Source of the DNA: Styela clava
Lineage: Eukaryota
NCBI RefSeq assembly: GCF_964204865.1
Contig: NC_135255.1
Span: forward strand, 15,500,001-15,564,000
DNA: 64,000 bases
Reading direction: 5' to 3'
Under the pieces are notes generated by a model. It had not been told where the DNA came from. It made no database searches and worked only from the letters and a program-made list of their open reading frames with translations. Below, one piece after another: positions 19,597 through 62,019 of the stretch. Every line of letters begins with the position of its first letter. The first letter of the stretch is position 1. The position numbers and the translations under genes were made by a program.

Positions 19597-20476
19597 TAGG
19601 GTTGCCATACGCCATATTTTTCCTTGACATGTCCGGGATTTTAGTGGTCAAACTTGCGTAAGGGAGCAATTTCAAAAAATTCTTAAGTGTCAAGGGGTTT
19701 ACAGTGAATCCCTGCTACAAATCCTCAAATTTTCAGATATTTCGTCGCATTCAGATAATTGTAATAATGTCACATATAACCTGAATTTCCATCTGTAATC
19801 GGTATTTTGGTTGAACCATTTTATAGCCTTTTTGCTGATTATGGAGTCGAAATAAACTTATTTATTTTATTTATTTATAACTACCTTCACCTGTAGGCCT
19901 ACTTTATTCCATGCTAGGGTTTAGTTTTAGTCACTAGTGGATAGGATAGGATAGGATTTACATATTTATCCCGGGGGAGAGGAAAGCCGATGAGACGGCT
20001 TATCCATATGGCGAACCACGGCCTCTCGTCCGGTTATCATTCCAAGTCGGGTATGGGATTAGTTTTACTGTATTGTTTGTTTTCGGAAGCATGGACTTGG
20101 TGGTGGAGGAAGCCGTAACCGACCAGCGGTTACGTGAACCACCCAACGACGGCGAGGAGTCCAGCAATCCTCTCGCACATAACCGTCCCTGCATGGGATT
20201 CGAACCTGCGAACCCACGCAGAGTAATTAGAGGTGCGGTGGCGAGCGTATTCCTAACGCTTAGCCCGTTGAGCCACACCGCTAAAAATAGCAACAATTAT
20301 GATCCTTTCGTTTTGTTCCGTATTTATTCTATTCTCACGAGAAAGCGGAGACAGCTTGTGCCTTTGGATACATCGTGAATTTATACCATAATATAAGTGT
20401 TTTGGTTGCAAAATCGGTCAATGTGGCTCATTAATATTTTGTCAGGGATTTTGTCTTTTCAGATATGGTAACCCTA
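19597..20476. mobile_element. Non-autonomous hAT element (TAGGG termini) containing a SINE
   Basis: TIRs tagggttgccata / tatggtaacccta; perfect 8-bp TSD tcgtagac. Confidence 0.88.
19939..20282 (-). mobile_element. Full-length tRNA-derived SINE
   Basis: Minus strand reads agcggtgTGGCTCAACGGG (A box) ... GGTTCGAATCC (B box), then body and (ATCCT)n tail; second copy at 17272-18943. Confidence 0.85.
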
Positions 20477-20509
20477 TCGTAGACTTATTGCTGATTGGAC
20501 ATTTTTGCA

Positions 20510-23293
20510 GGGACGGACTAAAAGTAGGCACTTGCAAATTAGACACTTTTTTAGGCACTTATTTAGGCACTTTGGAAAAAAAGTAAAAAGGGCGTAATAC
20601 CTTTTAAAAACATAATTAATTAGTTAAAAATGGTCAAATTAAATGTTGAAAACGCAAATTGCAACGGGCAAACTCAATAACAATATTTAAAACGTAGTAT
20701 TAAAGGCAGTCGCACGCGCTTGGTCACCACATAAGCTAGGCACATATTTAGGCACTTCGAAAAATAAAGAAAATGGCAGTTATCACTAATAAAAGACAGA
20801 GACATAAACATATTACCCACACTGATTAGCCTGGGTAAATATCCAATAGATGCACTTGAGTCTAGTACTGGAATTTAGAAATAATAAATTGTTACCGTTA
20901 GGCACTTATTTAGGCACTCGGAAAAAAGGTGAAATGGACGTAGTAACTCCTAAAAAGGTAATGAATTAGTTCAAAATATTTAAATTAAATGTTGAACGCG
21001 AAAATTGCAACAGTTAAATCCAATAACGATTTTAAAAACGTAGTATTAAAGGGAGACGCACGCGCTCTGTCACCACGTATGCTAGGCACATATTTGGGCA
21101 CTTCGAAAAAAGAAGAAAATGGCAATTATCACTAATAAAAGACAGAGAAATGGAAATATTACCCACACTGATTAGCCTGGGTAAATATCCAATAGATGCA
21201 CTTGAGTCTAGTACTGGAATTTAGAAATAATAAATTGTTACCGGTAGGCACTTATTTAGGCACATCGAAAAAAAGGTGAAATGGGCGTAATAACTTTTAA
21301 AATGATAATGAATTAGTTGAAAATTGTCAAATTAAATATTGAACACGCAAATTGCAATATGTGAACCGAATAACAATATTTAAAACGTAGTTTTAAAAGG
21401 AGTCACACGCGCTCGGTCACCACATATGCTAGGCACATATTTAGGCAATTCGAAAAAAGAAGAAAATCGGAATTATCACCAATAGAAGACAGAGAAATAA
21501 AAATATTACCCACACTGATTAGCCTGGACAAATATCCAATAGATGCACTTGAGTCTCGTACTGGAATTTAGGAATAATAAATTGTTACCGGTGGGCACTT
21601 CGAAAAAAGGGTGAAATGGACGTAGTAACTCCTAGAATGATAATGAATTAGTTCAAAATATTTAAATTAAATGTTGAACGCAAAAATTGCAACAGTTAAA
21701 CCCAATAATGATTTTTAAAACTTAGTACTAAAGGGAGACGCACGCGCTCTGTCACCACATATGCTAGGCACATATTTAGGCACATCGAAAAAAAAAATGG
21801 GAATAATCACCAATAAAAAAAAGAAAATAAAAATATTAGTCAAAATGATTAGCCTGGGACTGGGTGAATATCCAATAGATGCACTTGAGTCTAGTAGTGG
21901 TATTTGAGAATAATAAATTGTTACCGGTAGACACCTTTTACCGTGTTTCCGCGAAATTAAGACAGTGTCCTATTTCAAATTTCTTCCTAAAATTACCACT
22001 AGGGCTTTTTTTCGGGGGATGTCTTATATTTTAATTTATCAAAAACAAAATTACAAAGTAAAGAATTACGATATTTTCAAATATGCAAAATATAAAAACC
22101 GATATCATTGGGTTTACTTGTTGCAATTTGCATATTAATTTTTTAATTTAAATATTTTAAACCAATTCATTATCTATTTAAAAGTTATTACGCCCATTTT
22201 ACGCATTTTTAGAAGTGTCTAAATAAGTGACTAAAAAGTGCCTACCGGTAACAATTTATTATTCTCAAATATCACTACTAGACTCAAGTGCATTCATCGG
22301 ATATTCAAATAGGCTAATTATTTTGACTAATATTTTCATTTTCTGTATTTTTATTCATGATAATTACCATTTTCTTTATATATCGAAGTGTCTAAATATG
22401 TGCCTAGCATGTGTGGTGACAGAGCGCGTGCGTCTCCCTTCAATACTACGTTTTAAAAATCGTTATTGGGTTTAACTGTTGCAATTTTCGCGTTCAACAT
22501 TTAATTTAAATATTTTGAACTAATTCATTATCTTTCTAGGAGTTACTACGTCCATTTCACCTTTTTTTTTCGGAGTGCCTAAATAAGTGCCTACCGGTAT
22601 CAATTTATTATTTCTAAATTCCAGTACTAGACTCAAGTGCATCTATTGGATATTTACCCAGGCTAATCAGTGTGGGTAATATTTTTATTTCCCTGTCTTT
22701 TATTAGTGATAATTGCCATTTTCTTTATTTTTCGAAGTGCCTAAATATGTGCCTAGCATATGTGGTGACAGAGCGCGTGCGTCTCCCTTTAGTACTACGT
22801 TTTAAAATCATTACAGTATTGGGATTTAACTGTTGCAATTTTTGCGTTCAACATTTAATTTAAATATTTTGAACTAATTCATTATCTTTCTAGGAGTTAC
22901 TACGTCCATTTCACCTTTTTTTTCGGAGTGCCTAAATAAGTGCCTACCGGTATCAATTTATTATTTCTAAATTCCAGTACTAGACTCAAGTGCATCTCTT
23001 AGATATTTACTCAGGCTAATCAGTGTGGTTAATATGTTTATTTCTCCGTCTTTTATTAGTGAATATGCCATTTTATTTATTTTTCGAAGTGCCTGAATAT
23101 GTGCCTAGCATATGTGGTGACCAAGCGCGTGCGACTGCCTTTAATACTGCGTTTTAAATATTGCTATTGAGTTTGCCCGTTGCAATTTGCGTTTTCAACA
23201 TTTAATTTGACCATTTTTAACTAATTAATTATGTTTTTAAAAGGTATTAAGGCCTACTACTAAGGCCATAAAGGCCTACTTTTAGTCCGTCCC
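20510..23293. mobile_element. Foldback-type (Mutator/FB-like) element: long modular inverted arms
   Basis: Termini gggacggactaaaagtaggc / gcctacttttagtccgtccc; perfect 9-bp TSD atttttgca (20501-20509, 23294-23302). Left arm has about four ~350-bp tandem units (to ~21935); right arm has about three and a half of the same units inverted (from ~22115). Confidence 0.92.
21940..22110 (+). mobile_element. Truncated end of a Tc1/mariner-pogo-like element in the foldback spacer
   Basis: Begins TA-ccgtgtttccgcgaaattaagac with an internal inverted echo ttttcgggggatgtcttat; no partner end found. Confidence 0.45.
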
Positions 23294-23299
23294 ATTTTT

Positions 23300-23900
23300 G
23301 CAGAAATAAACGGGGAAATTGATGTTGCGGCAAACATTTTCGAGGCCTTTGAGAAAATTGAGGCCTTCTTCTGCCTGATGTAATTTAGTAGTTTGTGGAC
23401 GCGTAGGACTTCTTAACTTGCGCCTAACATTGTCAGAATGCCGGATCACATTCGCATGGTGCTAGCTCACAGCATCACACTCGTGTGACGCCACACTCGC
23501 CATCCAAGTGATCCAACACTGTTTTTGTTAGGCCATCGATAGTTGTTAGGCCATATTGAGGTGACTGAGCTTGCTGTTGCATTTGCGTGGGATTATCAGC
23601 TATTAGGGTATATATATTATCAGAGCAACCAAGTATTTTTATGGAATAACGTTTATGAAGTGAATATAATAGTTGGTTCACCGCAGCTTGAGTGCGGGCT
23701 TGCTGGCTTGGGTAACTCATTTAAAATCGATATTATTTTACGTTTCGCTTGTTGTAGGAGTTGATGTGGCACATTCAGTAGAGACATTCCTGTCGAAATT
23801 TTGGAATAATTTATTAGAATATTGTGCGTGCTTCTTACTCTTTATATTTGCGCCGATTTGTTTGTTTAATTCTTGTGTGTAATGCTGCAATCGGTGAAAG
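23300..23900 (+). promoter_or_regulatory. Putative promoter and non-coding first exon upstream of APEX2/YLPM1
   Basis: Relatively CpG-rich, non-repetitive stretch directly after the foldback element, ending in candidate donors AAG|GTAAAA (GT at 23901) and AG|GTACGG (GT at 23911). TSS not known. Confidence 0.4.
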
Positions 23901-24679
23901 GTAAAATTAGGTACGGTAAATTATACTTATACTTATAAAATTACCAGATTCTGAGATTACTGAATTGTTTATATGGTGTACCGGTACCGGTACTCTAATC
24001 CATCAATTTTATTTTAGTAGACTACCGGTACTGCTGTACTAAATTGCATTTCTACGGAAACAAGGTTCTTGAAAAGCAGCCATCGATGTATGTCAGTATG
24101 TAGAGACTAACGTCTGAACGTATGTTTTACTAGGACTGAATATTTTTTATTGTCATAACACAGACACTGATTGCATTCAGGTGAAAGACCTGAAGATGGA
24201 GTTTGAAACTCCGCCAAACCTTTTACTGTTTTAGTTTAACTACTACAGTACTAGGCTATTATATTAGTGTGCAGAGAAAAGAAGAAAAATATTGGATTTG
24301 TATCAACTCCTAGCATACGGCTTGCGGTTATGTAAAACTGCATATGCAGTGTCCGATGTCACACATAGGGTGAGAATATATGGCAGACATTACGATATTT
24401 CACTCTTCAGCTATTTGTTCTAATTTAAGCCAGTACTGCATTAATAACCTTGAAACTAATTGTTCTATTTTCGTGACTATTCATTGTCTAATTAACTGTT
24501 ACTCAACTATTTGGTTCCAAGGTAAATTGAAATTTATAGGTAAAATACTGAAAATGTGAAATTAACATAGTGCAGTAGTGTTTCTGTGATTGATGAACTT
24601 CATCGAACAAGTATAGACTGACAGATAATATCTTCTCCTGCCATTACATTTGTAAATGTTATTTTTTTAGTTTTAAAAT

Positions 24680-26374
24680 ATGAAGCTTGTAACTTGGAAT
24701 ATTAATGGCCTCAGATCAATGAAAGGACCAATTAAACCATTTCTTGATGGGCTTGACGCTGACATTATATGCTTTCAAGAAACTAAAATAACAAAAGATC
24801 AAATTGAGAGCGATTTAGCATTAGTTGATGGATATTCTTCATACTTCAGCTTTTCACAAACACGCCAAGGTTATTCTGGCGTGGCCACATATTGTAAAGC
24901 AAATACTACACCATTTCTAGCACAAGAAGGATTATTTGATTTTGCAGAAAAGTCTGCAGGAAATGGAGCCATTATGCATTATGGGGATTTAAGTTCAAAA
25001 TTCTCGCAGGAGAGATTGTATGAAGTTGATAAGGAAGGGAGAACAATAATTACTCAGCATGAATTTTATGATTCAGCGAAGAAAAGAAATGAAAAGTTAA
25101 CTGTTATAAATGTCTATTGTCCGAGGGCAGATCCAGAAAAACCAGAGCGACAAATTTTCAAAATGGATTTTTACAAAATGTTAGAAACTCGAGCAAACGC
25201 AATATTGAATTCGGGAAATCATGTTATTATTTGTGGGGATATCAATACATCACATAGAAGGATTGATCATTGTGATCCTAATGATCCAGAATTGTTTTAC
25301 GATAATCCATGCCGAGAATGGATGGATGGGATACTATATAACAAAGGTGACTACTCTGCTCTAATACATTTAAATTCAAACTCTATCCAGACAGAATTCT
25401 GCGAAGGATTTGAAAATATAAAAAATGTTTCATGCGAAAAAGATTCTAGTACTGATGGAACTGAATCAAATACGGAGGAATCTACACAACAAAATTTAAA
25501 ACAGGATTCGGAAAATATAGATATTTGTAACAACAATAGAGCAAAATTCATCGATACCTTCAGATACTTTTTCCCACATCGAAAAAATGCATTCACTTGT
25601 TGGAACACAATGAAATCTTGTCGAGAAACGAACTACGGCACGAGAATTGATTATATTTTAGCGAATTCTGAGTTTCATATAAATTATGTTAAAAATTGTG
25701 AGATTTTACCGGAGATTCATGGATCTGATCATTGTCCAGTCAAAGCAGATATCAATGTAACTATGATACCTGCATCCAAATGTCCGCCATGTTGTACTAA
25801 ATATATGACAGAATTTGGAGGCCGACAGCAGACTTTGTCATCCTTTTTTTCTCAAAAAGCAAAATCAAAATATGATGATGAGCAGCTTTGTCAAAGCCCT
25901 GTAAAGACAGTAGTATCTTCTTCACTAAAGACCTCTACGCAGAAACTTTCTAAATCATCTGTTTCAAATTCCAAAAAGCGGAAACATGAAAACAGCAGTA
26001 ATACTGTAAGCAAACAGACGAAACTACATTTTTTTACCAAAAATAAATCTTCAAAACCTAAAGTAAATATGGAAATAAACACTAAAAAATCAGCGAATAC
26101 TTTGTCTCTTTCTCAAGAAAAACTCGAATTCATGCCAAAAATTGATAAATCTTTCACGACAAAAAGCTCAAGTGAAGTTTCAAACTTTTGGAAATCAGTA
26201 CTGAAAGGCCCTGAACCTCCTCCATTATGTAAAGGTCACAACGAACCTTGTTTTCTTAGAACAGTTAAAAAAGAAGGTCCAAACTTAGGAAAGCAATTTT
26301 ATTGTTGTCGACGTCCTGATGGACATAAAACTAATCCTGAAGCAAGATGTTCATTCTTTCAATGGAAGACCTGA
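24680..26374 (+). CDS. APEX2: AP endonuclease 2 (APE2), single-exon CDS, 564 aa
   Basis: EEP-domain motifs TWNINGLR, DIICFQETK, GYSGVATYC, EGR, NVYCP, GDINTSH, GTRIDYIL and GSDHCPV; PIP-box-like QQTLSSFF; C-terminal GRF-type zinc finger (PLCKGHNEPC..VKKEGPNLGKQFYCC..RCSFFQW). Preceded by the acceptor tttttttAG (AG at 24669-24670); AATAAA at 26467, 26519 and 26635. Confidence 0.95.
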   Translation: MKLVTWNINGLRSMKGPIKPFLDGLDADIICFQETKITKDQIESDLALVDGYSSYFSFSQTRQGYSGVATYCKANTTPFLAQEGLFDFAEKSAGNGAIMHYGDLSSKFSQERLYEVDKEGRTIITQHEFYDSAKKRNEKLTVINVYCPRADPEKPERQIFKMDFYKMLETRANAILNSGNHVIICGDINTSHRRIDHCDPNDPELFYDNPCREWMDGILYNKGDYSALIHLNSNSIQTEFCEGFENIKNVSCEKDSSTDGTESNTEESTQQNLKQDSENIDICNNNRAKFIDTFRYFFPHRKNAFTCWNTMKSCRETNYGTRIDYILANSEFHINYVKNCEILPEIHGSDHCPVKADINVTMIPASKCPPCCTKYMTEFGGRQQTLSSFFSQKAKSKYDDEQLCQSPVKTVVSSSLKTSTQKLSKSSVSNSKKRKHENSSNTVSKQTKLHFFTKNKSSKPKVNMEINTKKSANTLSLSQEKLEFMPKIDKSFTTKSSSEVSNFWKSVLKGPEPPPLCKGHNEPCFLRTVKKEGPNLGKQFYCCRRPDGHKTNPEARCSFFQWKT

Positions 26375-27112
26375 CTGAAACTTTTCATTGATTATCTTGT
26401 ACCAACCTTGATAAATGTTCATTTTTCGGACATATCCATTTTCAAGTTGAATATTTCTTATTAAGGAATAAACTTTTTTAAGCCTTTTTAGATATCAGTA
26501 TTCTTTACTGAGAGAAAGAATAAATTTTAAATGCAAACTTGATTTATGGTAGTTATTGAGTAGGCTATTTAACCGCTGCTGCCCTCACAGTATTGGTTTC
26601 AAAGTCATGTTTATACCCAAATTTTTCAGCTCACAATAAATTTGATATTTCAAATTTCGATGGAATCACACTAACTACTTAAATTTTATGCAAATCTTAT
26701 CATGTTAACATCTTTTTCGGTATAATAGTTGTTTTTAAACAGCGCAATGACGTATTCTTGTAATAAACTATGCCATTCCTCCTTTAATAATAGTTGTGTT
26801 TAGCTGGTCATGATTATGGAAAATTTTCATTTTACTAGGCCTACTAAATTGCTGATTTATGCTTATGGATATAATTTGATGCAATTTAAAAGTAGTTCAG
26901 CTCTCGTATTTCTATTTCAGCCAATTTAATAATATATTTTCATACTTCAATTTGCAGTGGTTACTATATCCATAATCAATTTGTTGTATTGATTTTTGGA
27001 CTAACGGACGGACTATCATTATAAACTTTGAATGTGTTTGCTAAGGATGCTTTAAAACAAATCTATAAAACACTGGATAATATTGCAAGCGTATTAATAT
27101 AAATATAGCAAT

Positions 27113-30100
27113 ATGATGCCGATGGGGTGGAACCAAATACGACAAGCAAAAGTTGCTGATGTCCAAGGGCAAATGAGGCACAATCATATGGGTCAGAATC
27201 AGCAGCAACAGTATAGTCACCACCAACAAATGAATCCCCATACAATGATGATGCACAATCAACAAGCTCCATCCTTTGATTGGAATCAACAGCATATGAT
27301 GCATCAACAACAAATGTATTCTCATCCTATGATGGGACATTTTGGAATGCAAAACCCACAAGTGAGTTGCTTATGGTAGATGTTTCAAAGATTTGATTCG
27401 AATAAAAACAAAACTAATGATATTATAAATATTCTGTTTTTGTGCTAAATTTGTCTGTATTGTAGAGAGGGAGGTTCTTTATGTCAAAATTGCAATGTGA
27501 ATTTTGACATACCCGTATAGAGAAATTTTGATGCTCTGCTGATCAATTTATCGTCATGTTTTTGCATTTCTTGTTAATAAAAAGCTTGACCGTATTGGCA
27601 GCTCATCTCACCACTCATGGAAAATTCATTGTATACTTAAATCAGTGCCATTTTATGTATATTTTGTGCTTAACTATGTTTTTGTTTCACATTTTGAGAG
27701 AATTACCAGCTGTATTTTTTTTCTGTATTTTTGTATTCCATTGGCATACAAGTATTAATTAATACAATATGCCATTGTAATGACTAGTAATTAATCTAAT
27801 TACCTAATCAACTTGTATTTTTAGATGATGATGGGAATTGCAGACAAACCACCAGAGCCATCAGAACCTCCTCCTCCATCACCACCTGCTCCATTACCCA
27901 ATGACGAACCCCCTCCAGCTCCCCCTGCTGCTGAGCAGAAGGTAAGGCTTTCTTTATATCACCTAGAATAGTTTTAGTAATTTGGGAATTTAGTCACTCA
28001 CTCACTGCTAGTTGAATTACTAGTTAACTAGAAAATGGCCCATTCAAACACATTATGCTTTTTTCTTTGCAATATTTGCCTAATATATTGCTGGACAGGC
28101 AACGAGTTTAGACTAGAATTATGAACACAGAGAGAGTTATAGAGAAGAATTTTGAAACAAATAGGATAATTCGGGTTCTTCGACAATGTATAAAAAACTA
28201 ACACATTGGATGAAAATTCAGGAAAGTTGCCATAACAATCAAGTTCAAAACATGGGATGTAAAAGTACTCCATGGTCAATCTTACTGACATACAGAAGTA
28301 TTGTGCAACTTGCGTCCCACGGGCCAAGTGCGTCCCACAGAGGAAAATTATGTGGCTAACGAAACAAGTTTTCAATTTAGTTTAATTTGGTATGTGCAAG
28401 TAGTTCCATGCCTATGAGGCTATACCGTTCAATTTTTTTTATTCGTGCCTATTATAATGCCCTTACAGCTAGCTTGAGCGAAGCGAACAGCGCATATCAA
28501 GCAATAACCAAAATTTTTGTACCTGCAAGCTGCAACTACTAGAGAACCTATGTTAAATAAAAATGCGGCTCGTGGTTTTACCCAGATATTTTTATCTGGC
28601 CCTTCTGTATTATAGTTTGCACACCACTGACATGAAGTCTATGAAAAAGACAAGATGCTTAGACCTTAGAGCAGTGGTTCTTAAACTTTTTCGAGCGCGA
28701 CCCAAATCTGAGTTTTATGAATACTCGCGACCCAATCCTAAAAAACGCAAAATGTGTTTTTAATGTTAGTACAGTTTGACTCAAATACAGACAACTATTT
28801 ATTAGAAACAGTCCATTGACTCAGTGAGATTGATGAAACTGAAATTTCCTTTTTCATTATATCTTCAATACACAGCTCTATTTTACTTAACGCAATACGT
28901 AAGTTGTCACGGGTATCGAAGCGATTGCGAGCTTAGTTTTGATAACCGTCAGTGCCAAATATCCTCGCTCGCACAAGTTCCTTGTCGCTAATTGTAGCAG
29001 AAAAGGCGTCCGCTGTCCGTCGCAAACACGACATCCTAGCTGGCCTTCCGTATCTCTCGCAATATACAACTTTTTACTCGTCACATGTGCACGCACTGCT
29101 TCGTTCGCGGTAAATGGTGCCTCGAGATGAAGTCACATTTTCTCTAGATATTGAATAATCTAATGTCGAGAAGCGAGCTTTTTCATTGCGTCGTCTATTA
29201 CAATTTTCATTACCAAAAAGACACCCATTTTTGTTTATTTTAATCCACTAAGACGACATTCCATGCGGTCAACACATCGACAAGCGACGTGCATGGTTAC
29301 CGATACCATAAAAATAATACACGTGACTGGCATATCAGAATTGTGATGTAACAATGAGCTCAAGACTGTTCTTACCGTGAATAAAATTTTTTATTTCATT
29401 ATTTTTAAATACCAGAGTTTAGAAGCTAAATTGAAACATTGGGAAAGCTGAAAATTCGTCCTTCTCCTCTCAGATTGCCCTTGCATTGACGACCTTGTCG
29501 CGACCCATTTTTAAACCTTCCGCGACCCATGTTTGGGTCGCGACCCATACTTTAAGAACCACTGCCTTAGAGGATATTATTATAACAGTTTGATGATTTT
29601 AATTTCAGTGGTGGGAATCTGAAATGCGGAATTTGCAAAATATGCATCATAGAAATGAATTGGAACGATTATCTGGTGAAAAATGGTTTCAAAGTATGAA
29701 TACAAGTCAGCAGATTGAATGTTGGCAACACAAACTGCAACTTATTAATAAGGAGAAAAAAGGTGATTTATTTTATATCTATCCCATTTCTCAATAGTCC
29801 AAATCTGAGTTGAAGACTGGTTTAACATTTCACTTCAAATAAATGTTATATATGGACTGTCAGTTTTACGAGGGCTTGTTTGGAAAAGCTGAATTATTTA
29901 TAAAAAAGGTTACTAAACTTAATTTGCATTTCAACTTTTTCACAAGGCAAACAATGTTAATAATAGTTGTTAGAAGAAAAATTTCATTGTATGTTACCCC
30001 GAAAATTGACTTCTCTGTTAAATTAGAAGAAGCTGAGATACACTGGCTTAAATATAGCTATCAGTACTTTTGTGTGGCAAAGCTGTTTAACTATTTCAAA

Positions 30101-42100: not shown

Positions 42101-45100
42101 CCCCCTTATCCCTGGAGGCTGGGCAACATGAGATTATAACTTGGGACGCCATTTCATAAGCACAAATATAATTATTGTTGCTATTTATTCTGGCTCATTT
42201 ACTATTTTAGAATCTTTTGTAAATAAAAGTGATCGTTTTTAAACACAATAATCTCTTAAAGTAAAATCATTTGCATATTTTTCATCATTTAATTCTTCTA
42301 GTGACCGACGTTTTCGCAGTAGAAGCCGAAGTAGAAGTCCAAACACAAATCGCGGGAGAGATCGAGATCCGGGTAGACCAAGAGCACGTAGTCCTCCCAG
42401 AAATGATTCTCGACGAAGAGATCCGGATCGTGACCGAGGAGGAAGGAATGAAAGGAGGTCGAAATCGCCTGATCATCGTCCAACAGAATTCAGAGATCGC
42501 AGAAGATTTACGAGTCCTTCTGGAGATCCAGTTCGAACAATGTATGTTTATAATTAAGTTGAAAAATGGAGAAATATAGCATTTTGTTAATGATTAGAAA
42601 GCCTGATTAGTTGGATAAAAGTTTCAACTGGGTGGCATTATACATTGTGTTTTATTCTAGATTTCATTTGTTGGTTGAAAAAGGTTGAATTTTTGTGCCT
42701 CGATTTTCACTCTTTTAATCTGTCACACCTTGCACGTAACCTTTTTTGTTTTTTGAATAAAAAAGAACTCTACAATTTTCAGATTATCTACCACTTTTTG
42801 AATCTCTTAATTCTGAATAATGTATATTTTGGCGATATATTTTTGATTTCACATCAATGACCAACTTTTAAAAACTGGTTTTCATGGTTTTTATGATTAT
42901 CCAGATTTGTTGGTGCTTATATTGATGTGATGTCTAACATAAAATCAAATTTTTGCTAATGTTTATAAAACTATGCATTTCTATTCTGACTTTAATAATT
43001 TTCATATCAGTGCCTAATTTTTAAATTCCTTTTCTTACTATTTCGTGAAAGTTATACATTACCTTATCAATACTCAGGTCGCCTGCCAGGTTCAAACAAG
43101 CATTGCCGAAGCCAATGAAGATTGAACCTGTAATGATTCGTGTTGAAGATTTGTTAAATGATCCTGCGAGACAGCGACGTCCAAAACGAGTATTTTCATT
43201 AATCAAATCTGTATTAGTTAAAAATCGATCTAAGACTTTATTTTTTTCAAGTCGTGATTTTATTAAACTTTTCGAGTAGTCATGTTTTAATAGAACTTTC
43301 CTTTTAGATTGTCATCATTTTACGAGGCTTGCCTGGTAGTGGAAAGACACACATTGCAAAGTTAATCAGGGTAATCTGAATATACTTTTCTAGCTGATTG
43401 TACCTGCTTCATATGACGTTCATTCGTGCCTTTTGTTCCAAACAAACCCCGGTACAAATTTCCAGTGATAGATAAAATGCTAGTGCTTTTGGAAAGACTG
43501 GTCAAAAGCTTTCAATATATTGGCCAACTTTTTTAAAATGTCCCTACTAATGCAAAAAAAATAAAGAGACTTCAAATACTAGGATAGAATTACTAGGATA
43601 TGCTGTTATTTCATTCGAGAACACTCAAATTGTGGTGTTAAGAGAAAGAACTACATTAGTTCATAAATCAATCGTTTTTCTACTTCAGAATTGAAGTACG
43701 TACCTGATAGTATACCAACACAGTAGTTAATTCTAATTGCTGCAATATGTTAACTGCCTGAAATGTTTTGAATAGTTTGAAACTTTATGAAATATAGCTC
43801 AATTGAATTTACCTGAACGATGACAATAATATATTATGAATTCAGAAAAAGTTAAGCTACTACTCATTTGGTAATTAAGGTGTGTTATTGCTTTGCATTC
43901 TACATTATATTATTCACATTGTAATTAATATATTTCGTTGGACAGGATCTTGAAACTACCAAAGGTGTCACTCCAAGAGTGCTTGGTCTCGATGATTATT
44001 TCTTAGTCGAGAACGAAAAATTTGAGAAGGATTCTGAAACTGGGAGAATAGTGAAACGAAAGGTAACAGATAATGATATGTTAACGTTCCAAAATGAATG
44101 ATGACTTTTCCTTAATAATCAATTGTACAATTAAATGACTTGCTTCCTCAAGTGGTCAGATGTTGGTTCGTGCTTGGGATTGTGGCCGAATAACTTTGAA
44201 TTATATCTTGACAAAAAGTTTATTAGTTTATTTCCAAATTTGGTATCTCTTCTTGCTCATTAGTTTTCAACCTCCCCATTTGTTGTCTTTATTTTTATTT
44301 TCACATCAGAATATCATGAATTTTCATTTGCAGATATAGTCAGTTTTTTTTATTATTTTTGCTATCGTATATTAGTTTGTTTTTAATGGCCAACATTGGT
44401 GTTCAATAATATCTTTAGCCTATACTAAAAATTATATTGTTCCTGCCAGGTTCATGAATATGAATACGAAGCTGCCATGGAACCATCGTACAGAGATAGT
44501 TTGTTAAAATCTTTTAAAAAGACACTTGAAGATGGATATTTCAATTTTGTTATTGTTGATAGTATCAATGATAAAGTTTCACATTTTTCTGAATTCTGGA
44601 CAGCAGCAAAGAAAGCTGTTTTTGAGGTGATTCCTTCTGGAATTTTATTTCTTCATTCAATATTTGGACTCTGGAGTCTGAGGCTCTGAGCGGAAGTCAT
44701 ATTTTCGAACCCTCAAAGCCAAGCTCAGCTATTAAATCTCCTCAAGTGGGGGTCCGAATTGTAATTTATTTGTGATAATCGGACTCACAATTTCTGACAG
44801 AAACTGAAAAGGAATAAAGTTGTTTGGGGATTTCAAGGAGATATTTGACTTAAGGCTTGCATATTTCCGTTTTTGTTGTTGAAATTTTTTTTTCTCGCAA
44901 TCTTGAGTCAAACAAGTTTTCTATCGAAATTAGAGCCAGACTGTTTTTTAAATGGCTGGCGTTTAGAGTGGTAGTTTGGTGTAAATTTTACCGATTGCGT
45001 AGACCAGTGGTGCGTGGAGCTAATTAAAAATAAAAGTATTTGTTAGATTTGATCTTTCCAGCCTTATTTTAGATATTTACATTTTTCCATTCCGGTATTT

Positions 45101-58327: not shown

Positions 58328-62019
<3,692 letters not shown>

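What the first reader, a model, noticed from the sequence alone, without database searches (positions are those of the whole stretch)
23740..27361. Intronless APEX2 wedged in front of YLPM1: shared first exon with competing acceptors, or a trans-spliced operon
Seen: a complete single-exon APEX2 CDS starts 9 nt after a clean acceptor (tttttttAG, 24670) and has its own AATAAA signals (26467-26640). Only 738 bp after its stop comes the YLPM1 ATG, itself preceded by acceptors (tctatttcAG 26920, tttgcAG 26957). The spacer is AT-rich with no promoter-like CpG-rich stretch by eye. The most plausible promoter and donor sites lie at 23300-23911, upstream of both genes. Known: vertebrate APEX2 is multi-exon and not paired with YLPM1; ascidians use SL trans-splicing and operons. 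Inference: a retroposed APEX2 landed in YLPM1 intron 1 and borrows its promoter. One pre-mRNA would then yield either a DNA-repair nuclease (proximal acceptor plus intronic polyA) or the PP1-regulatory RNA-processing factor YLPM1 (distal acceptor). Alternatively the pair is a polycistron resolved by trans-splicing. Either model couples two unrelated nuclear proteins through splice/polyA choice.
Basis: partly seen in the sequence, partly recalled or inferred. Interest (0 to 1): 0.8.

Follow-up and report, generated by a model that had tools for sequence, protein, structure and literature searches.

The report
Two tightly packed sea-squirt genes
A DNA-repair gene without introns (APEX2) sits just in front of the RNA-processing gene YLPM1 in a sea squirt, and RNA assemblies show two separate messages rather than one shared first exon, which is an ordinary arrangement for these compact genomes.

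Summary
The anatomy is real. The window is Styela clava or a very close relative. A 564-aa single-exon APEX2 ORF lies at 24680-26374. The YLPM1 ATG at 27113 follows 738 nt later on the same strand.

The main reading, a retroposed APEX2 in YLPM1 intron 1 sharing a first exon at 23740-23911, is not supported:
- In 3 of 3 RNA-like runs that stretch has no contig.
- No joint runs from it to any acceptor.
- The YLPM1 intron 27361>27825 is seen in 3 of 3 RNA-like runs and not in the DNA run.
- APEX2 is the genome's only copy and has no retroposition scars.

RNA contigs cover most of the "spacer", to 26901/26911. YLPM1 contigs start at 26954/26979. The two RNAs therefore end and begin within tens of bases of each other.

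I favour a YLPM1 start of its own (0.55). An operon resolved by leader trans-splicing stays open (0.3), because contigs cannot show caps or leaders. Both are known ascidian arrangements, and the scan holds many similar operon notes for this genome. Interest is low.

The parts
23740..23911 (+). It is not transcribed in the runs examined.
   Evidence: The depth bins spanning 23394-23984 are 0 in X1, X5 and X9, while the DNA run X10 covers them.
23934..23939 (+). TATAAA, a candidate TATA box for the APEX2 primary transcript (inferred).
   Evidence: Motif position is. The first RNA contig upstream of APEX2 begins at 23989, 55 nt downstream. Not tested.
23989..24483 (+). Patchily transcribed leader upstream of APEX2, possibly a discarded outron or a rare unspliced 5' leader.
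   Evidence: X1 has a contig at 23989-24214 and X5 one at 24281-24483. X9 has none.
24574..24575 (+). AG directly before the 5' end of the APEX2 RNA contig. It is a candidate acceptor for a leader or an upstream exon.
   Evidence: X1 record 2 fits from 24576 onward, with 7 letters before it that fit nothing here. The X1 bin 24379-24575 is empty. The pyrimidine fraction upstream is only 0.36.
24576..24679 (+). APEX2 5' untranslated region as assembled. It contains upstream ATGs at 24593 and 24656 and the unused tttttttAG acceptor (24670).
   Evidence: The X1 contig 24576-25050 is colinear.
24680..26374 (+). APEX2 coding sequence, 564 aa, in a single exon.
   Evidence: RNA contigs are colinear with no joint inside the coding sequence. 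It is the only copy in the genome.
26375..26911 (+). APEX2 3' untranslated region, with AATAAA at 26467, 26519, 26635 and 26762. The longest RNAs reach at least 26901 (X5) and 26911 (X9).
   Evidence: Contigs: X1 26429-26645; X5 26210-26615 and 26586-26901; X9 24902-26611 and 26726-26911.
26912..26953 (+). The stretch between the spacer contigs and the YLPM1 contigs. It holds the AG ending at 26920, CCAAT at 26921 and AATATATTTT from 26931. It is either a core promoter or an intercistronic piece.
   Evidence: By my arithmetic on the bins, X5 has nothing over 26902-26978 and X9 has nothing over 26940-26953. In X9 at most 108 letter-depths are unaccounted for somewhere in the bin 26743-26939, which includes 26912-26939.
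26954..27112 (+). YLPM1 5' untranslated region as assembled. The AG at 26956-26957 lies inside it.
   Evidence: X9 record 27 fits 26954-27245 with one further unfitting letter. X5 record 21 fits from 26979.
27113..27361 (+). YLPM1 coding exon 1.
   Evidence: ORF. Donor gtgagt at 27362. Joint 27361>27825 in 3 of 3 RNA-like runs.
27362..27824 (+). YLPM1 intron 1.
   Evidence: GT..AG joint in X1, X5 and X9 but not in X10. The bin 27531-27727 is empty in the three RNA-like runs.
27825..27941 (+). YLPM1 exon 2. Exon 3 begins at 29609.
   Evidence: pieces and the loose end at 27941. The loose-end letters were found once in the window, at 29609 after tttcag.
44429..44686 (+). Open stretch holding a C-terminal YLPM1 exon (P-loop kinase-like part).
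   Evidence: named YLPM1 relatives. (atlas clusters carrying the 6PF2K, AAA_33 or KTI12 families; scores 0.91 for the 6PF2K clusters, 0.76-0.81 for the others).

Best explanation
APEX2 and YLPM1 are two separately made messages from two tandem genes packed almost end to end. They are not one gene with a shared first exon.

APEX2 is the genome's only APEX2. It is a single-exon gene under selection. I infer that it is transcribed from a start a little upstream of 23989, perhaps using the TATAAA at 23934. Its mature RNA begins at 24576, right after an AG. The 5' part was probably replaced by a short sequence from elsewhere, most simply the spliced leader (inferred, about 0.55). It ends at several poly(A) sites, and the longest forms run to at least 26901-26911.

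The YLPM1 message begins at about 26954. It stays colinear with the genome for 4 nt upstream of the only nearby AG. It is then spliced 27361>27825 and 27941>29609.

I infer that YLPM1 starts at its own compact promoter, which lies in the last bases of the APEX2 3' region (CCAAT at 26921, AT-rich box at 26931). Any coupling between the two genes would then be read-through or transcriptional interference, not a splice choice.

Shown: the gene identities, the single copy, the contig positions, the intron, and the absence of the proposed exon. Inferred: both transcription starts, leader addition at 24576, and the promoter.
For: - Identities: for APEX2; for YLPM1.
- Single copy: one search gives 2 matches. 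One is the locus itself. The other covers residues 288-363 at 32% identity, E 2.3e-7, with a stop inside.
- Selection: 9 of the 19 coding differences listed are synonymous, against 20% expected for random changes.
- RNA contigs (X1, X5 and X9 are RNA-like runs from three studies, X10 is a DNA run):
  - The joint 27361>27825 is in 3 of 3 RNA-like runs and 0 of 1 DNA runs.
  - The three bins spanning 23394-23984 are empty in 3 of 3 RNA-like runs.
  - No joint is listed from 239xx to 24671, 26921 or 26958.
  - The X1 contig fits from 24576, with 7 unfitting letters before it, and the bin upstream is empty.
  - Spacer contigs end at 26901 (X5) and 26911 (X9).
  - YLPM1 contigs begin at 26979 (X5) and 26954 (X9). 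The latter is colinear across the AG at 26956-57, with only one unfitting letter.
- By my arithmetic on the bins, the listed contigs account for all depth in X5 around the gap, and for all depth in X9 over 26940-27136.
- The YLPM1 intron bin 27531-27727 is empty while the spacer is covered. The spacer RNA therefore behaves like a stable untranslated region, not like discarded precursor.
- CCAAT and the AT-rich box are located.
- Ciona has no CpG-island promoters. Many of its genes give both trans-spliced RNAs and unspliced RNAs that keep the outron. The mean outron there is 438 bp (PMC4691747, abstract and passages).
Against: - Contigs cannot show caps, true ends, strand or leaders (stated).
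- The 7 unfitting letters at 24576 and the one at 26953 were not printed, so no leader was seen or excluded.
- In X1 the contigs over 26646-27108 were not among those listed, so a bridging RNA cannot be excluded there.
- The spacer contigs run at least 139 nt beyond the last AATAAA (26762). That is what read-through into an operon would look like. In Ciona, 16 of 18 operons lack AATAAA within 40 nt of the upstream gene's poly(A) site (PMC1488885, section 17).
- A single-exon first gene followed by a multi-exon gene is the typical shape of a Ciona operon (PMC2760879, passages).
- The CCAAT and AT-rich motifs are weak in 70% A+T DNA.
- The AG before 24576 has a poor pyrimidine tract (0.36).
Confidence: 0.55

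Rival explanations
1. Operon of the sea-squirt type. One primary transcript from the APEX2 promoter runs through APEX2 and its poly(A) signals. A given molecule is either polyadenylated to give APEX2 mRNA, or trans-spliced with the leader at 26958 (or 26921) to give YLPM1 mRNA.
For: - Both genes are on the same strand, and the first is single-exon, as is frequent for 5'-most operon genes in Ciona (PMC2760879).
- RNA contigs cover the spacer to 26901/26911, at least 139 nt past the last AATAAA.
- The distance between the two sets of contigs, 42-77 nt, is under the 100-bp working cut-off used for Ciona operons.
- Most Ciona operons have no AATAAA near the upstream poly(A) site.
- This genome holds a repeated leader-like sequence.
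- The scan has many operon candidates in this genome (untested notes).
Against: - No bridging contig is listed in any of the 3 RNA-like runs. In X5 and X9 the bins leave no room for one over 26940-26953.
- The X9 contig is colinear for 4 nt upstream of the 26956-57 AG and has only one unfitting letter, where several leader letters would be expected.
- There is no high-depth contig from 26921.
- Ciona operon genes abut with no DNA between them, the upstream mRNA ending on the AG. That is not shown here.
- Four canonical AATAAA follow APEX2.
Confidence: 0.3
2. APEX2 is a retrocopy lying in YLPM1 intron 1. One promoter and first exon at about 23740-23911 is spliced either to 24671 (APEX2 plus an intronic poly(A) site) or to 26921/26958 (YLPM1).
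For: GT donors exist at 23901 and 23911, and acceptor-like AGs end at 24670, 26920 and 26957. APEX2 has no introns.
Against: - There is no RNA contig over 23394-23984 in 3 of 3 RNA-like runs, and no such joints, while the real intron joint is seen in all 3.
- The X1 contig is colinear through 24670.
- There is only one APEX2 in the genome.
- There is no poly(A) relic or flanking duplication.
- Acceptor-like sites occur 7.5 times per kb.
Confidence: 0.03
3. YLPM1 is trans-spliced at 26958 but from its own transcript, which starts inside the spacer. This would be a monocistronic outron, and the spacer RNA would be that outron rather than the APEX2 3' region.
For: About half of Ciona genes are trans-spliced, and outrons average 438 bp. 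The spacer is transcribed.
Against: - A discarded outron should be about as rare as the intron, whose bin is empty in 3 of 3 runs, yet the spacer has contigs in 3 of 3.
- There is a gap between the spacer contigs and the YLPM1 contigs.
- The spacer contigs overlap or follow on from APEX2 contigs (X5: 26210-26615 and 26586-26901).
Confidence: 0.1

Closest known systems
Ciona intestinalis SL-resolved operons (Satou et al. 2006, PMC1488885; Satou et al. 2008, PMC2760879)
   Same: A same-strand pair in an ascidian with a single-exon upstream gene. The transcribed units lie under 100 nt apart. The upstream RNA runs on without a nearby AATAAA.
   Different: No leader on the downstream RNA, no dicistronic RNA and no exact abutment on an AG was seen. 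The stop-to-ATG distance is 738 nt, and four canonical AATAAA follow APEX2.
Ordinary tandem genes of compact ascidian genomes, where the next promoter lies at the end of the upstream 3' untranslated region
   Same: There are two separate sets of RNA contigs, an uncovered stretch of tens of bases between them, and AT-rich promoter-like motifs there. No CpG island is expected.
   Different: The gap, at most 42-77 nt, is unusually tight, and a transcription start was not measured.
Vertebrate APEX2/APE2 (solved chains 6wcd and 5u6z; that these are frog APE2 is my recollection)
   Same: An ExoIII-type nuclease domain plus a C-terminal GRF zinc ribbon, with a full-length match.
   Different: The coding sequence here is a single exon.

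Membership tests
APEX2 / APE2 | ExoIII-type endonuclease/exonuclease/phosphatase domain | tested here: met
   PF03372, E 6.3e-20, profile 1-225 of 225. 6wcd_A at 2.3e-116.
APEX2 / APE2 | C-terminal GRF zinc ribbon | tested here: met
   PF06839, E 6.9e-12, residues 515-563. 5u6z_A at 3.2e-29.
APEX2 / APE2 | PCNA-binding motif and nuclease activity | not tested
   No call addressed them.
YLPM1 | C-terminal P-loop kinase-like region matching named YLPM1 proteins | tested here: met
   Stretch 44429-44686 found 509 hits at E<=0.001. Of 7 looked up, 5 are named YLPM1. Pfam on 7 YLPM1-region pieces gave nothing significant. The exons were searched one by one and never joined.
Ascidian SL-resolved operon | Same strand, under 100 bp between the upstream 3' end and the downstream 5' end | tested here: inconclusive
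   The contig ends lie 42-77 nt apart, but contigs do not give true RNA ends.
Ascidian SL-resolved operon | Spliced leader on the downstream mRNA at an AG | tested here: inconclusive
   The X9 contig is colinear to 26954 with one unfitting letter, and the X5 contig starts at 26979. Leader letters were not seen, and contigs can lose them.
Ascidian SL-resolved operon | RNA spanning both cistrons | tested here: not met
   No bridging contig is listed in 3 RNA-like runs. The bins exclude one over 26940-26953 in X5 and X9. In X1 the contigs there were not listed.
Ascidian SL-resolved operon | A spliced leader gene in the genome | tested here: inconclusive
   An array of 78 listed copies of ATTCTATTTGCATAAG lies on C3. 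It is never followed by GT directly (0 matches), and the Ciona Sm motif is not nearby (0 matches).
Retrogene nested in a host intron and using the host's first exon | Joints from one upstream exon to both genes | tested here: not met
   No such joints and no RNA over 23394-23984 in 3 of 3 runs.
Retrogene nested in a host intron and using the host's first exon | Parental intron-bearing copy, poly(A) relic, target-site duplication | tested here: not met
   One copy only. Only short chance-level repeats flank the gene.

The most novel reading that the evidence does not exclude
APEX2 and YLPM1 form a two-gene operon with an unusually long upstream 3' region. Each primary transcript is used once. 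It is either cut at one of four poly(A) signals to give the DNA-repair nuclease, or it reads through and receives the leader at 26958 to give YLPM1. The ratio of the two proteins would then be set by a contest between polyadenylation and trans-splicing.
Probability: 0.3. Interest if true: 0.35.

Novelty: new member of a known kind. Interest (0 to 1): 0.17.

Why it matters
It matters little beyond annotation. It shows that in this sea squirt the stop-to-ATG distance overstates the real gap between genes, because the upstream 3' region fills nearly all of it. It also shows that acceptor-like sites before start codons are too common to indicate shared exons.

If the pair proved to be an operon, it would be a handy case for studying how polyadenylation and leader trans-splicing compete on one transcript. 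Satou et al. raised that question for Ciona (PMC1488885, section 17). About a fifth of Ciona genes are already in operons, however, so one more pair would not surprise a specialist.

Tried and rejected
A scan of metagenome contigs gave 53 loci, the best only 39% identical and short. None was a tunicate locus I could use, so they were not studied.
- The YLPM1 exon-1 peptide found no relatives. Pfam on 7 YLPM1-region pieces gave nothing significant.
- Rfam found nothing in 20000-30000.
- No paper in the library names a Styela leader (listings only). PMC2860165 is not held.
- I tried to fix the leader's 3' end from the genome:
  - The Ciona leader occurs exactly only twice, which is chance level.
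  - Its one-mismatch form fills an array on C3.
  - No copy is followed directly by GT, and none has the Ciona Sm motif.
  - The boundary may therefore lie one base earlier (..CATAA|GTTGATG), or these copies may be interrupted. This is left open.
- I considered a 53-nt mini-intron (24523-24575) as the source of the 7 unfitting letters. I rejected it for X1 because the bin 24379-24575 is empty.
- Depth comparisons between genes were not used as evidence, because warns against them.
- Supplements are closed and I did not ask for them. The operon lists of PMC2760879 and the operon file of PMC7986045 might say whether Ciona pairs these genes.
Full report
**What is there.** The window is G000:C6:15500001-15564000. 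The 564-aa ORF at 24680-26374 is an APEX2:
- It has a complete ExoIII-type nuclease domain and a C-terminal GRF zinc ribbon.
- Its best solved-structure matches are 6wcd_A (2.3e-116) and the GRF chain 5u6z_A (3.2e-29).
- Of 1311 relatives at E<=0.001 among 7129 candidates, the best is 98% identical over the same 564 aa and is named APEX2-like of Styela clava. The next are 63%, 55% and 52% identical, from unnamed assemblies.

The organism is therefore S. clava or a very close relative. Earlier follow-up notes of this scan say the same.

The downstream gene is YLPM1. The open stretch 44429-44686 finds 509 proteins at E<=0.001. Of 7 long hits looked up, 5 are named YLP motif-containing protein 1, each matched near its C-terminus. 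One is unnamed and one is an "unnamed protein product". I searched the YLPM1 exons one by one and did not join them.

All are present:
- tttttttAG ends at 24670, 9 nt before the ATG.
- AATAAA lies at 26467, 26519 and 26635, plus one more at 26762.
- 738 nt separate the stop from the ATG at 27113.
- AGs end at 26920 and 26957.

Against chance, four AATAAA is a modest excess (0.94 expected from shuffles, 1.23 in other windows of the same size). Acceptor-like sites are common, however. There are 483 on this strand of the window (7.5 per kb), 10 of them in the spacer. The acceptors therefore carry no weight by themselves.

**RNA evidence.** The look-up of sequencing runs listed 13 runs. Nine hold about half of the sampled words, as RNA of a half-exonic stretch would. 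Four hold over 80%.

I laid 23000-28900 on X1, X5 and X9 (three studies) and on X10 as a DNA control. All are assembled contigs, so they show where RNA lies and how it is joined. They do not show caps, true ends, strand or level.

X1, X5 and X9 behave as RNA. The joint 27361>27825 (GT..AG) is in all three and not in X10. The intron bin 27531-27727 is empty in all three, while X10 covers all 30 bins. The loose end after 27941 is the same in all three and lies once in the window, at 29609 after tttcag. The YLPM1 exon chain is therefore 27113-27361, 27825-27941, 29609 onward.

**The shared first exon fails.**
- The three bins spanning 23394-23984, which hold the proposed exon and donors, are empty in 3 of 3 RNA-like runs.
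- No joint from there to 24671, 26921 or 26958 is listed.
- The X1 contig 24576-25050 is colinear through the 24670 acceptor.
- The genome has one APEX2. The only other match is a 76-residue piece at 32% identity with a stop inside.
- Nothing like a poly(A) relic or a target-site duplication flanks the gene.
- Of the 19 coding differences listed, 9 are synonymous, against 20% expected at random (49 further differences were not shown by the tool).

This is the working APEX2 of the species, not a spare retrocopy. Whether it lost its introns by retroposition long ago cannot be told.

**The 5' side of APEX2.** The X1 contig fits from 24576, directly after the AG at 24574-75. It has 7 letters before that which fit nothing in the stretch, and the bin 24379-24575 is empty in X1.

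A break exactly after an AG, with a short foreign head and no neighbouring exon, is what a spliced leader would leave. The letters were not printed, however, and the pyrimidine tract is poor (0.36).

Further upstream there are thin contigs at 23989-24214 (X1) and 24281-24483 (X5), and none in X9. This fits a primary transcript that starts shortly before 23989, with TATAAA at 23934, and whose roughly 600-nt head is mostly discarded. In Ciona the mean outron is 438 bp, and many genes give both trans-spliced and outron-retaining RNAs (PMC4691747, abstract and passages). This paragraph is inference.

**The spacer.** RNA contigs cover most of it:
- X1: 26429-26645, and non-zero depth in the bin 26743-26939.
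- X5: 26210-26615 and 26586-26901.
- X9: up to 26611, and 26726-26911.

They run at least 139 nt past the last AATAAA. YLPM1 contigs start at 26979 (X5) and 26954 (X9).

By my arithmetic on the bins, the listed contigs explain all depth in X5, leaving nothing over 26902-26978. They also explain all depth in X9 over 26940-27136, leaving nothing over 26940-26953. At most 108 letter-depths are unaccounted for in the X9 bin 26743-26939. For X1 the contigs in 26646-27108 were not among those listed, so I cannot say.

The 738-nt "spacer" is therefore mostly APEX2 3' region plus 159 nt of YLPM1 5' region. The two RNAs end and begin within tens of bases of each other.

**Own start or operon.**

For a start of YLPM1's own:
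- The X9 contig stays colinear for 4 nt upstream of the only nearby AG (26956-57) and has a single unfitting letter, where several leader letters would be expected.
- Nothing of that contig's kind starts at 26921.
- No bridging contig is seen.
- The spacer is covered although the intron is not, so the spacer RNA is stable, as a 3' region would be.
- CCAAT (26921) and an AT-rich box (26931) lie just upstream.
- The lack of a CpG-rich stretch means nothing here, since Ciona promoters have no CpG islands.

For an operon:
- The layout is the Ciona one, with a single-exon gene first, the same strand, and under 100 nt between the units (PMC2760879, passages).
- The upstream RNA runs on without a nearby AATAAA, as in 16 of 18 Ciona operons (PMC1488885, section 17).
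- Assemblers can clip short leader tips.

Against an operon, Ciona operon genes abut exactly, with the upstream mRNA ending on the AG, and that is not shown here.

I put a start of YLPM1's own at 0.55, an operon at 0.3, a private outron at 0.1 and the shared exon at 0.03.

**The leader itself.** The Ciona leader (Table 1 of PMC1488885) occurs exactly only twice in this genome. Its one-mismatch form, ATTCTATTTGCATAAG, stands in 78 listed copies in a tandem array at C3:24.85-24.96 Mb. Across the genome, matches within one mismatch number 105 on the reverse strand and 28 on the forward strand, against 27 and 17 for the controls.

In the 14 array copies read in the two sampled loci, the motif is followed by TTGATGAAAATAGAAT, which can pair with the leader's first nine bases, and then by tRNA genes. 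No copy has GT straight after the motif, and none has the Ciona Sm motif nearby. The exon end may lie one base earlier, or these copies may be interrupted, as earlier notes of this scan propose. I left this open.

**Limits.**
- The metagenome scan gave nothing usable.
- Read laying allows one call, so the clipped letters could not be read.
- Supplements were closed and not asked for. The Ciona operon lists are there.

**Verdict.** The main interpretation is not supported, and the fallback remains open. Either outcome is a known ascidian arrangement. The scan already holds many operon candidates for this genome: 224 notes fit those words. Interest is low.

Noticed in passing
G000:C3:24847565-24961794 (loci L013, L020): A tandem array with 78 listed copies of a one-mismatch form of the Ciona spliced leader. 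Units are about 495, 633, 1197 and 1800 nt. In the 14 copies read in the two sampled loci, the motif is followed by a stretch that pairs with its own first nine bases and then by tRNA genes. None is followed directly by GT.
   Followed up: partly
window 23000-23393 and 28516-28900: High-copy repeats. The DNA run's summed word depth there is 1,500-24,000, against about 50-75 in the unique DNA between them. The RNA-like runs also have contigs there. The first lies at the edge of the foldback element noted earlier for 20510-23293.
   Followed up: no
window 23475-23720 (-): An 81-aa ATG-started ORF in a locally G+C-richer patch (0.49), pointing away from APEX2. It has no Pfam match and no RNA contig in the three RNA-like runs, so it is probably not an expressed exon in those samples.
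   Followed up: partly
window 23963-24044: A cluster of overlapping palindromes and repeats built on TACCGGTAC, right where the first upstream RNA contig begins. It may be a binding site or a hairpin at the APEX2 start.
   Followed up: no
window 26609-26697: One X9 contig skips 87 nt here with TT..TC ends. This is not an intron. It is probably an insertion/deletion allele in the APEX2 3' region.
   Followed up: no
window 27734-27738: The DNA run's contig carries 19+3+4 extra letters in YLPM1 intron 1, which looks like an insertion polymorphism.
   Followed up: no
window 27106-27108: Small insertion and base differences just 5 nt before the YLPM1 ATG in X1 and X5, indicating allelic variation in the start context.
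   Followed up: no
window 60417-60797 (-): An exon of an AAA-type ATPase (PF00004, E 2.8e-10) on the opposite strand, beyond the end of YLPM1.
   Followed up: no
window 24593 and 24656; 27032: Short upstream ORFs lie in both assembled 5' regions: two before APEX2 (positions) and one before YLPM1 (read by eye).
   Followed up: no
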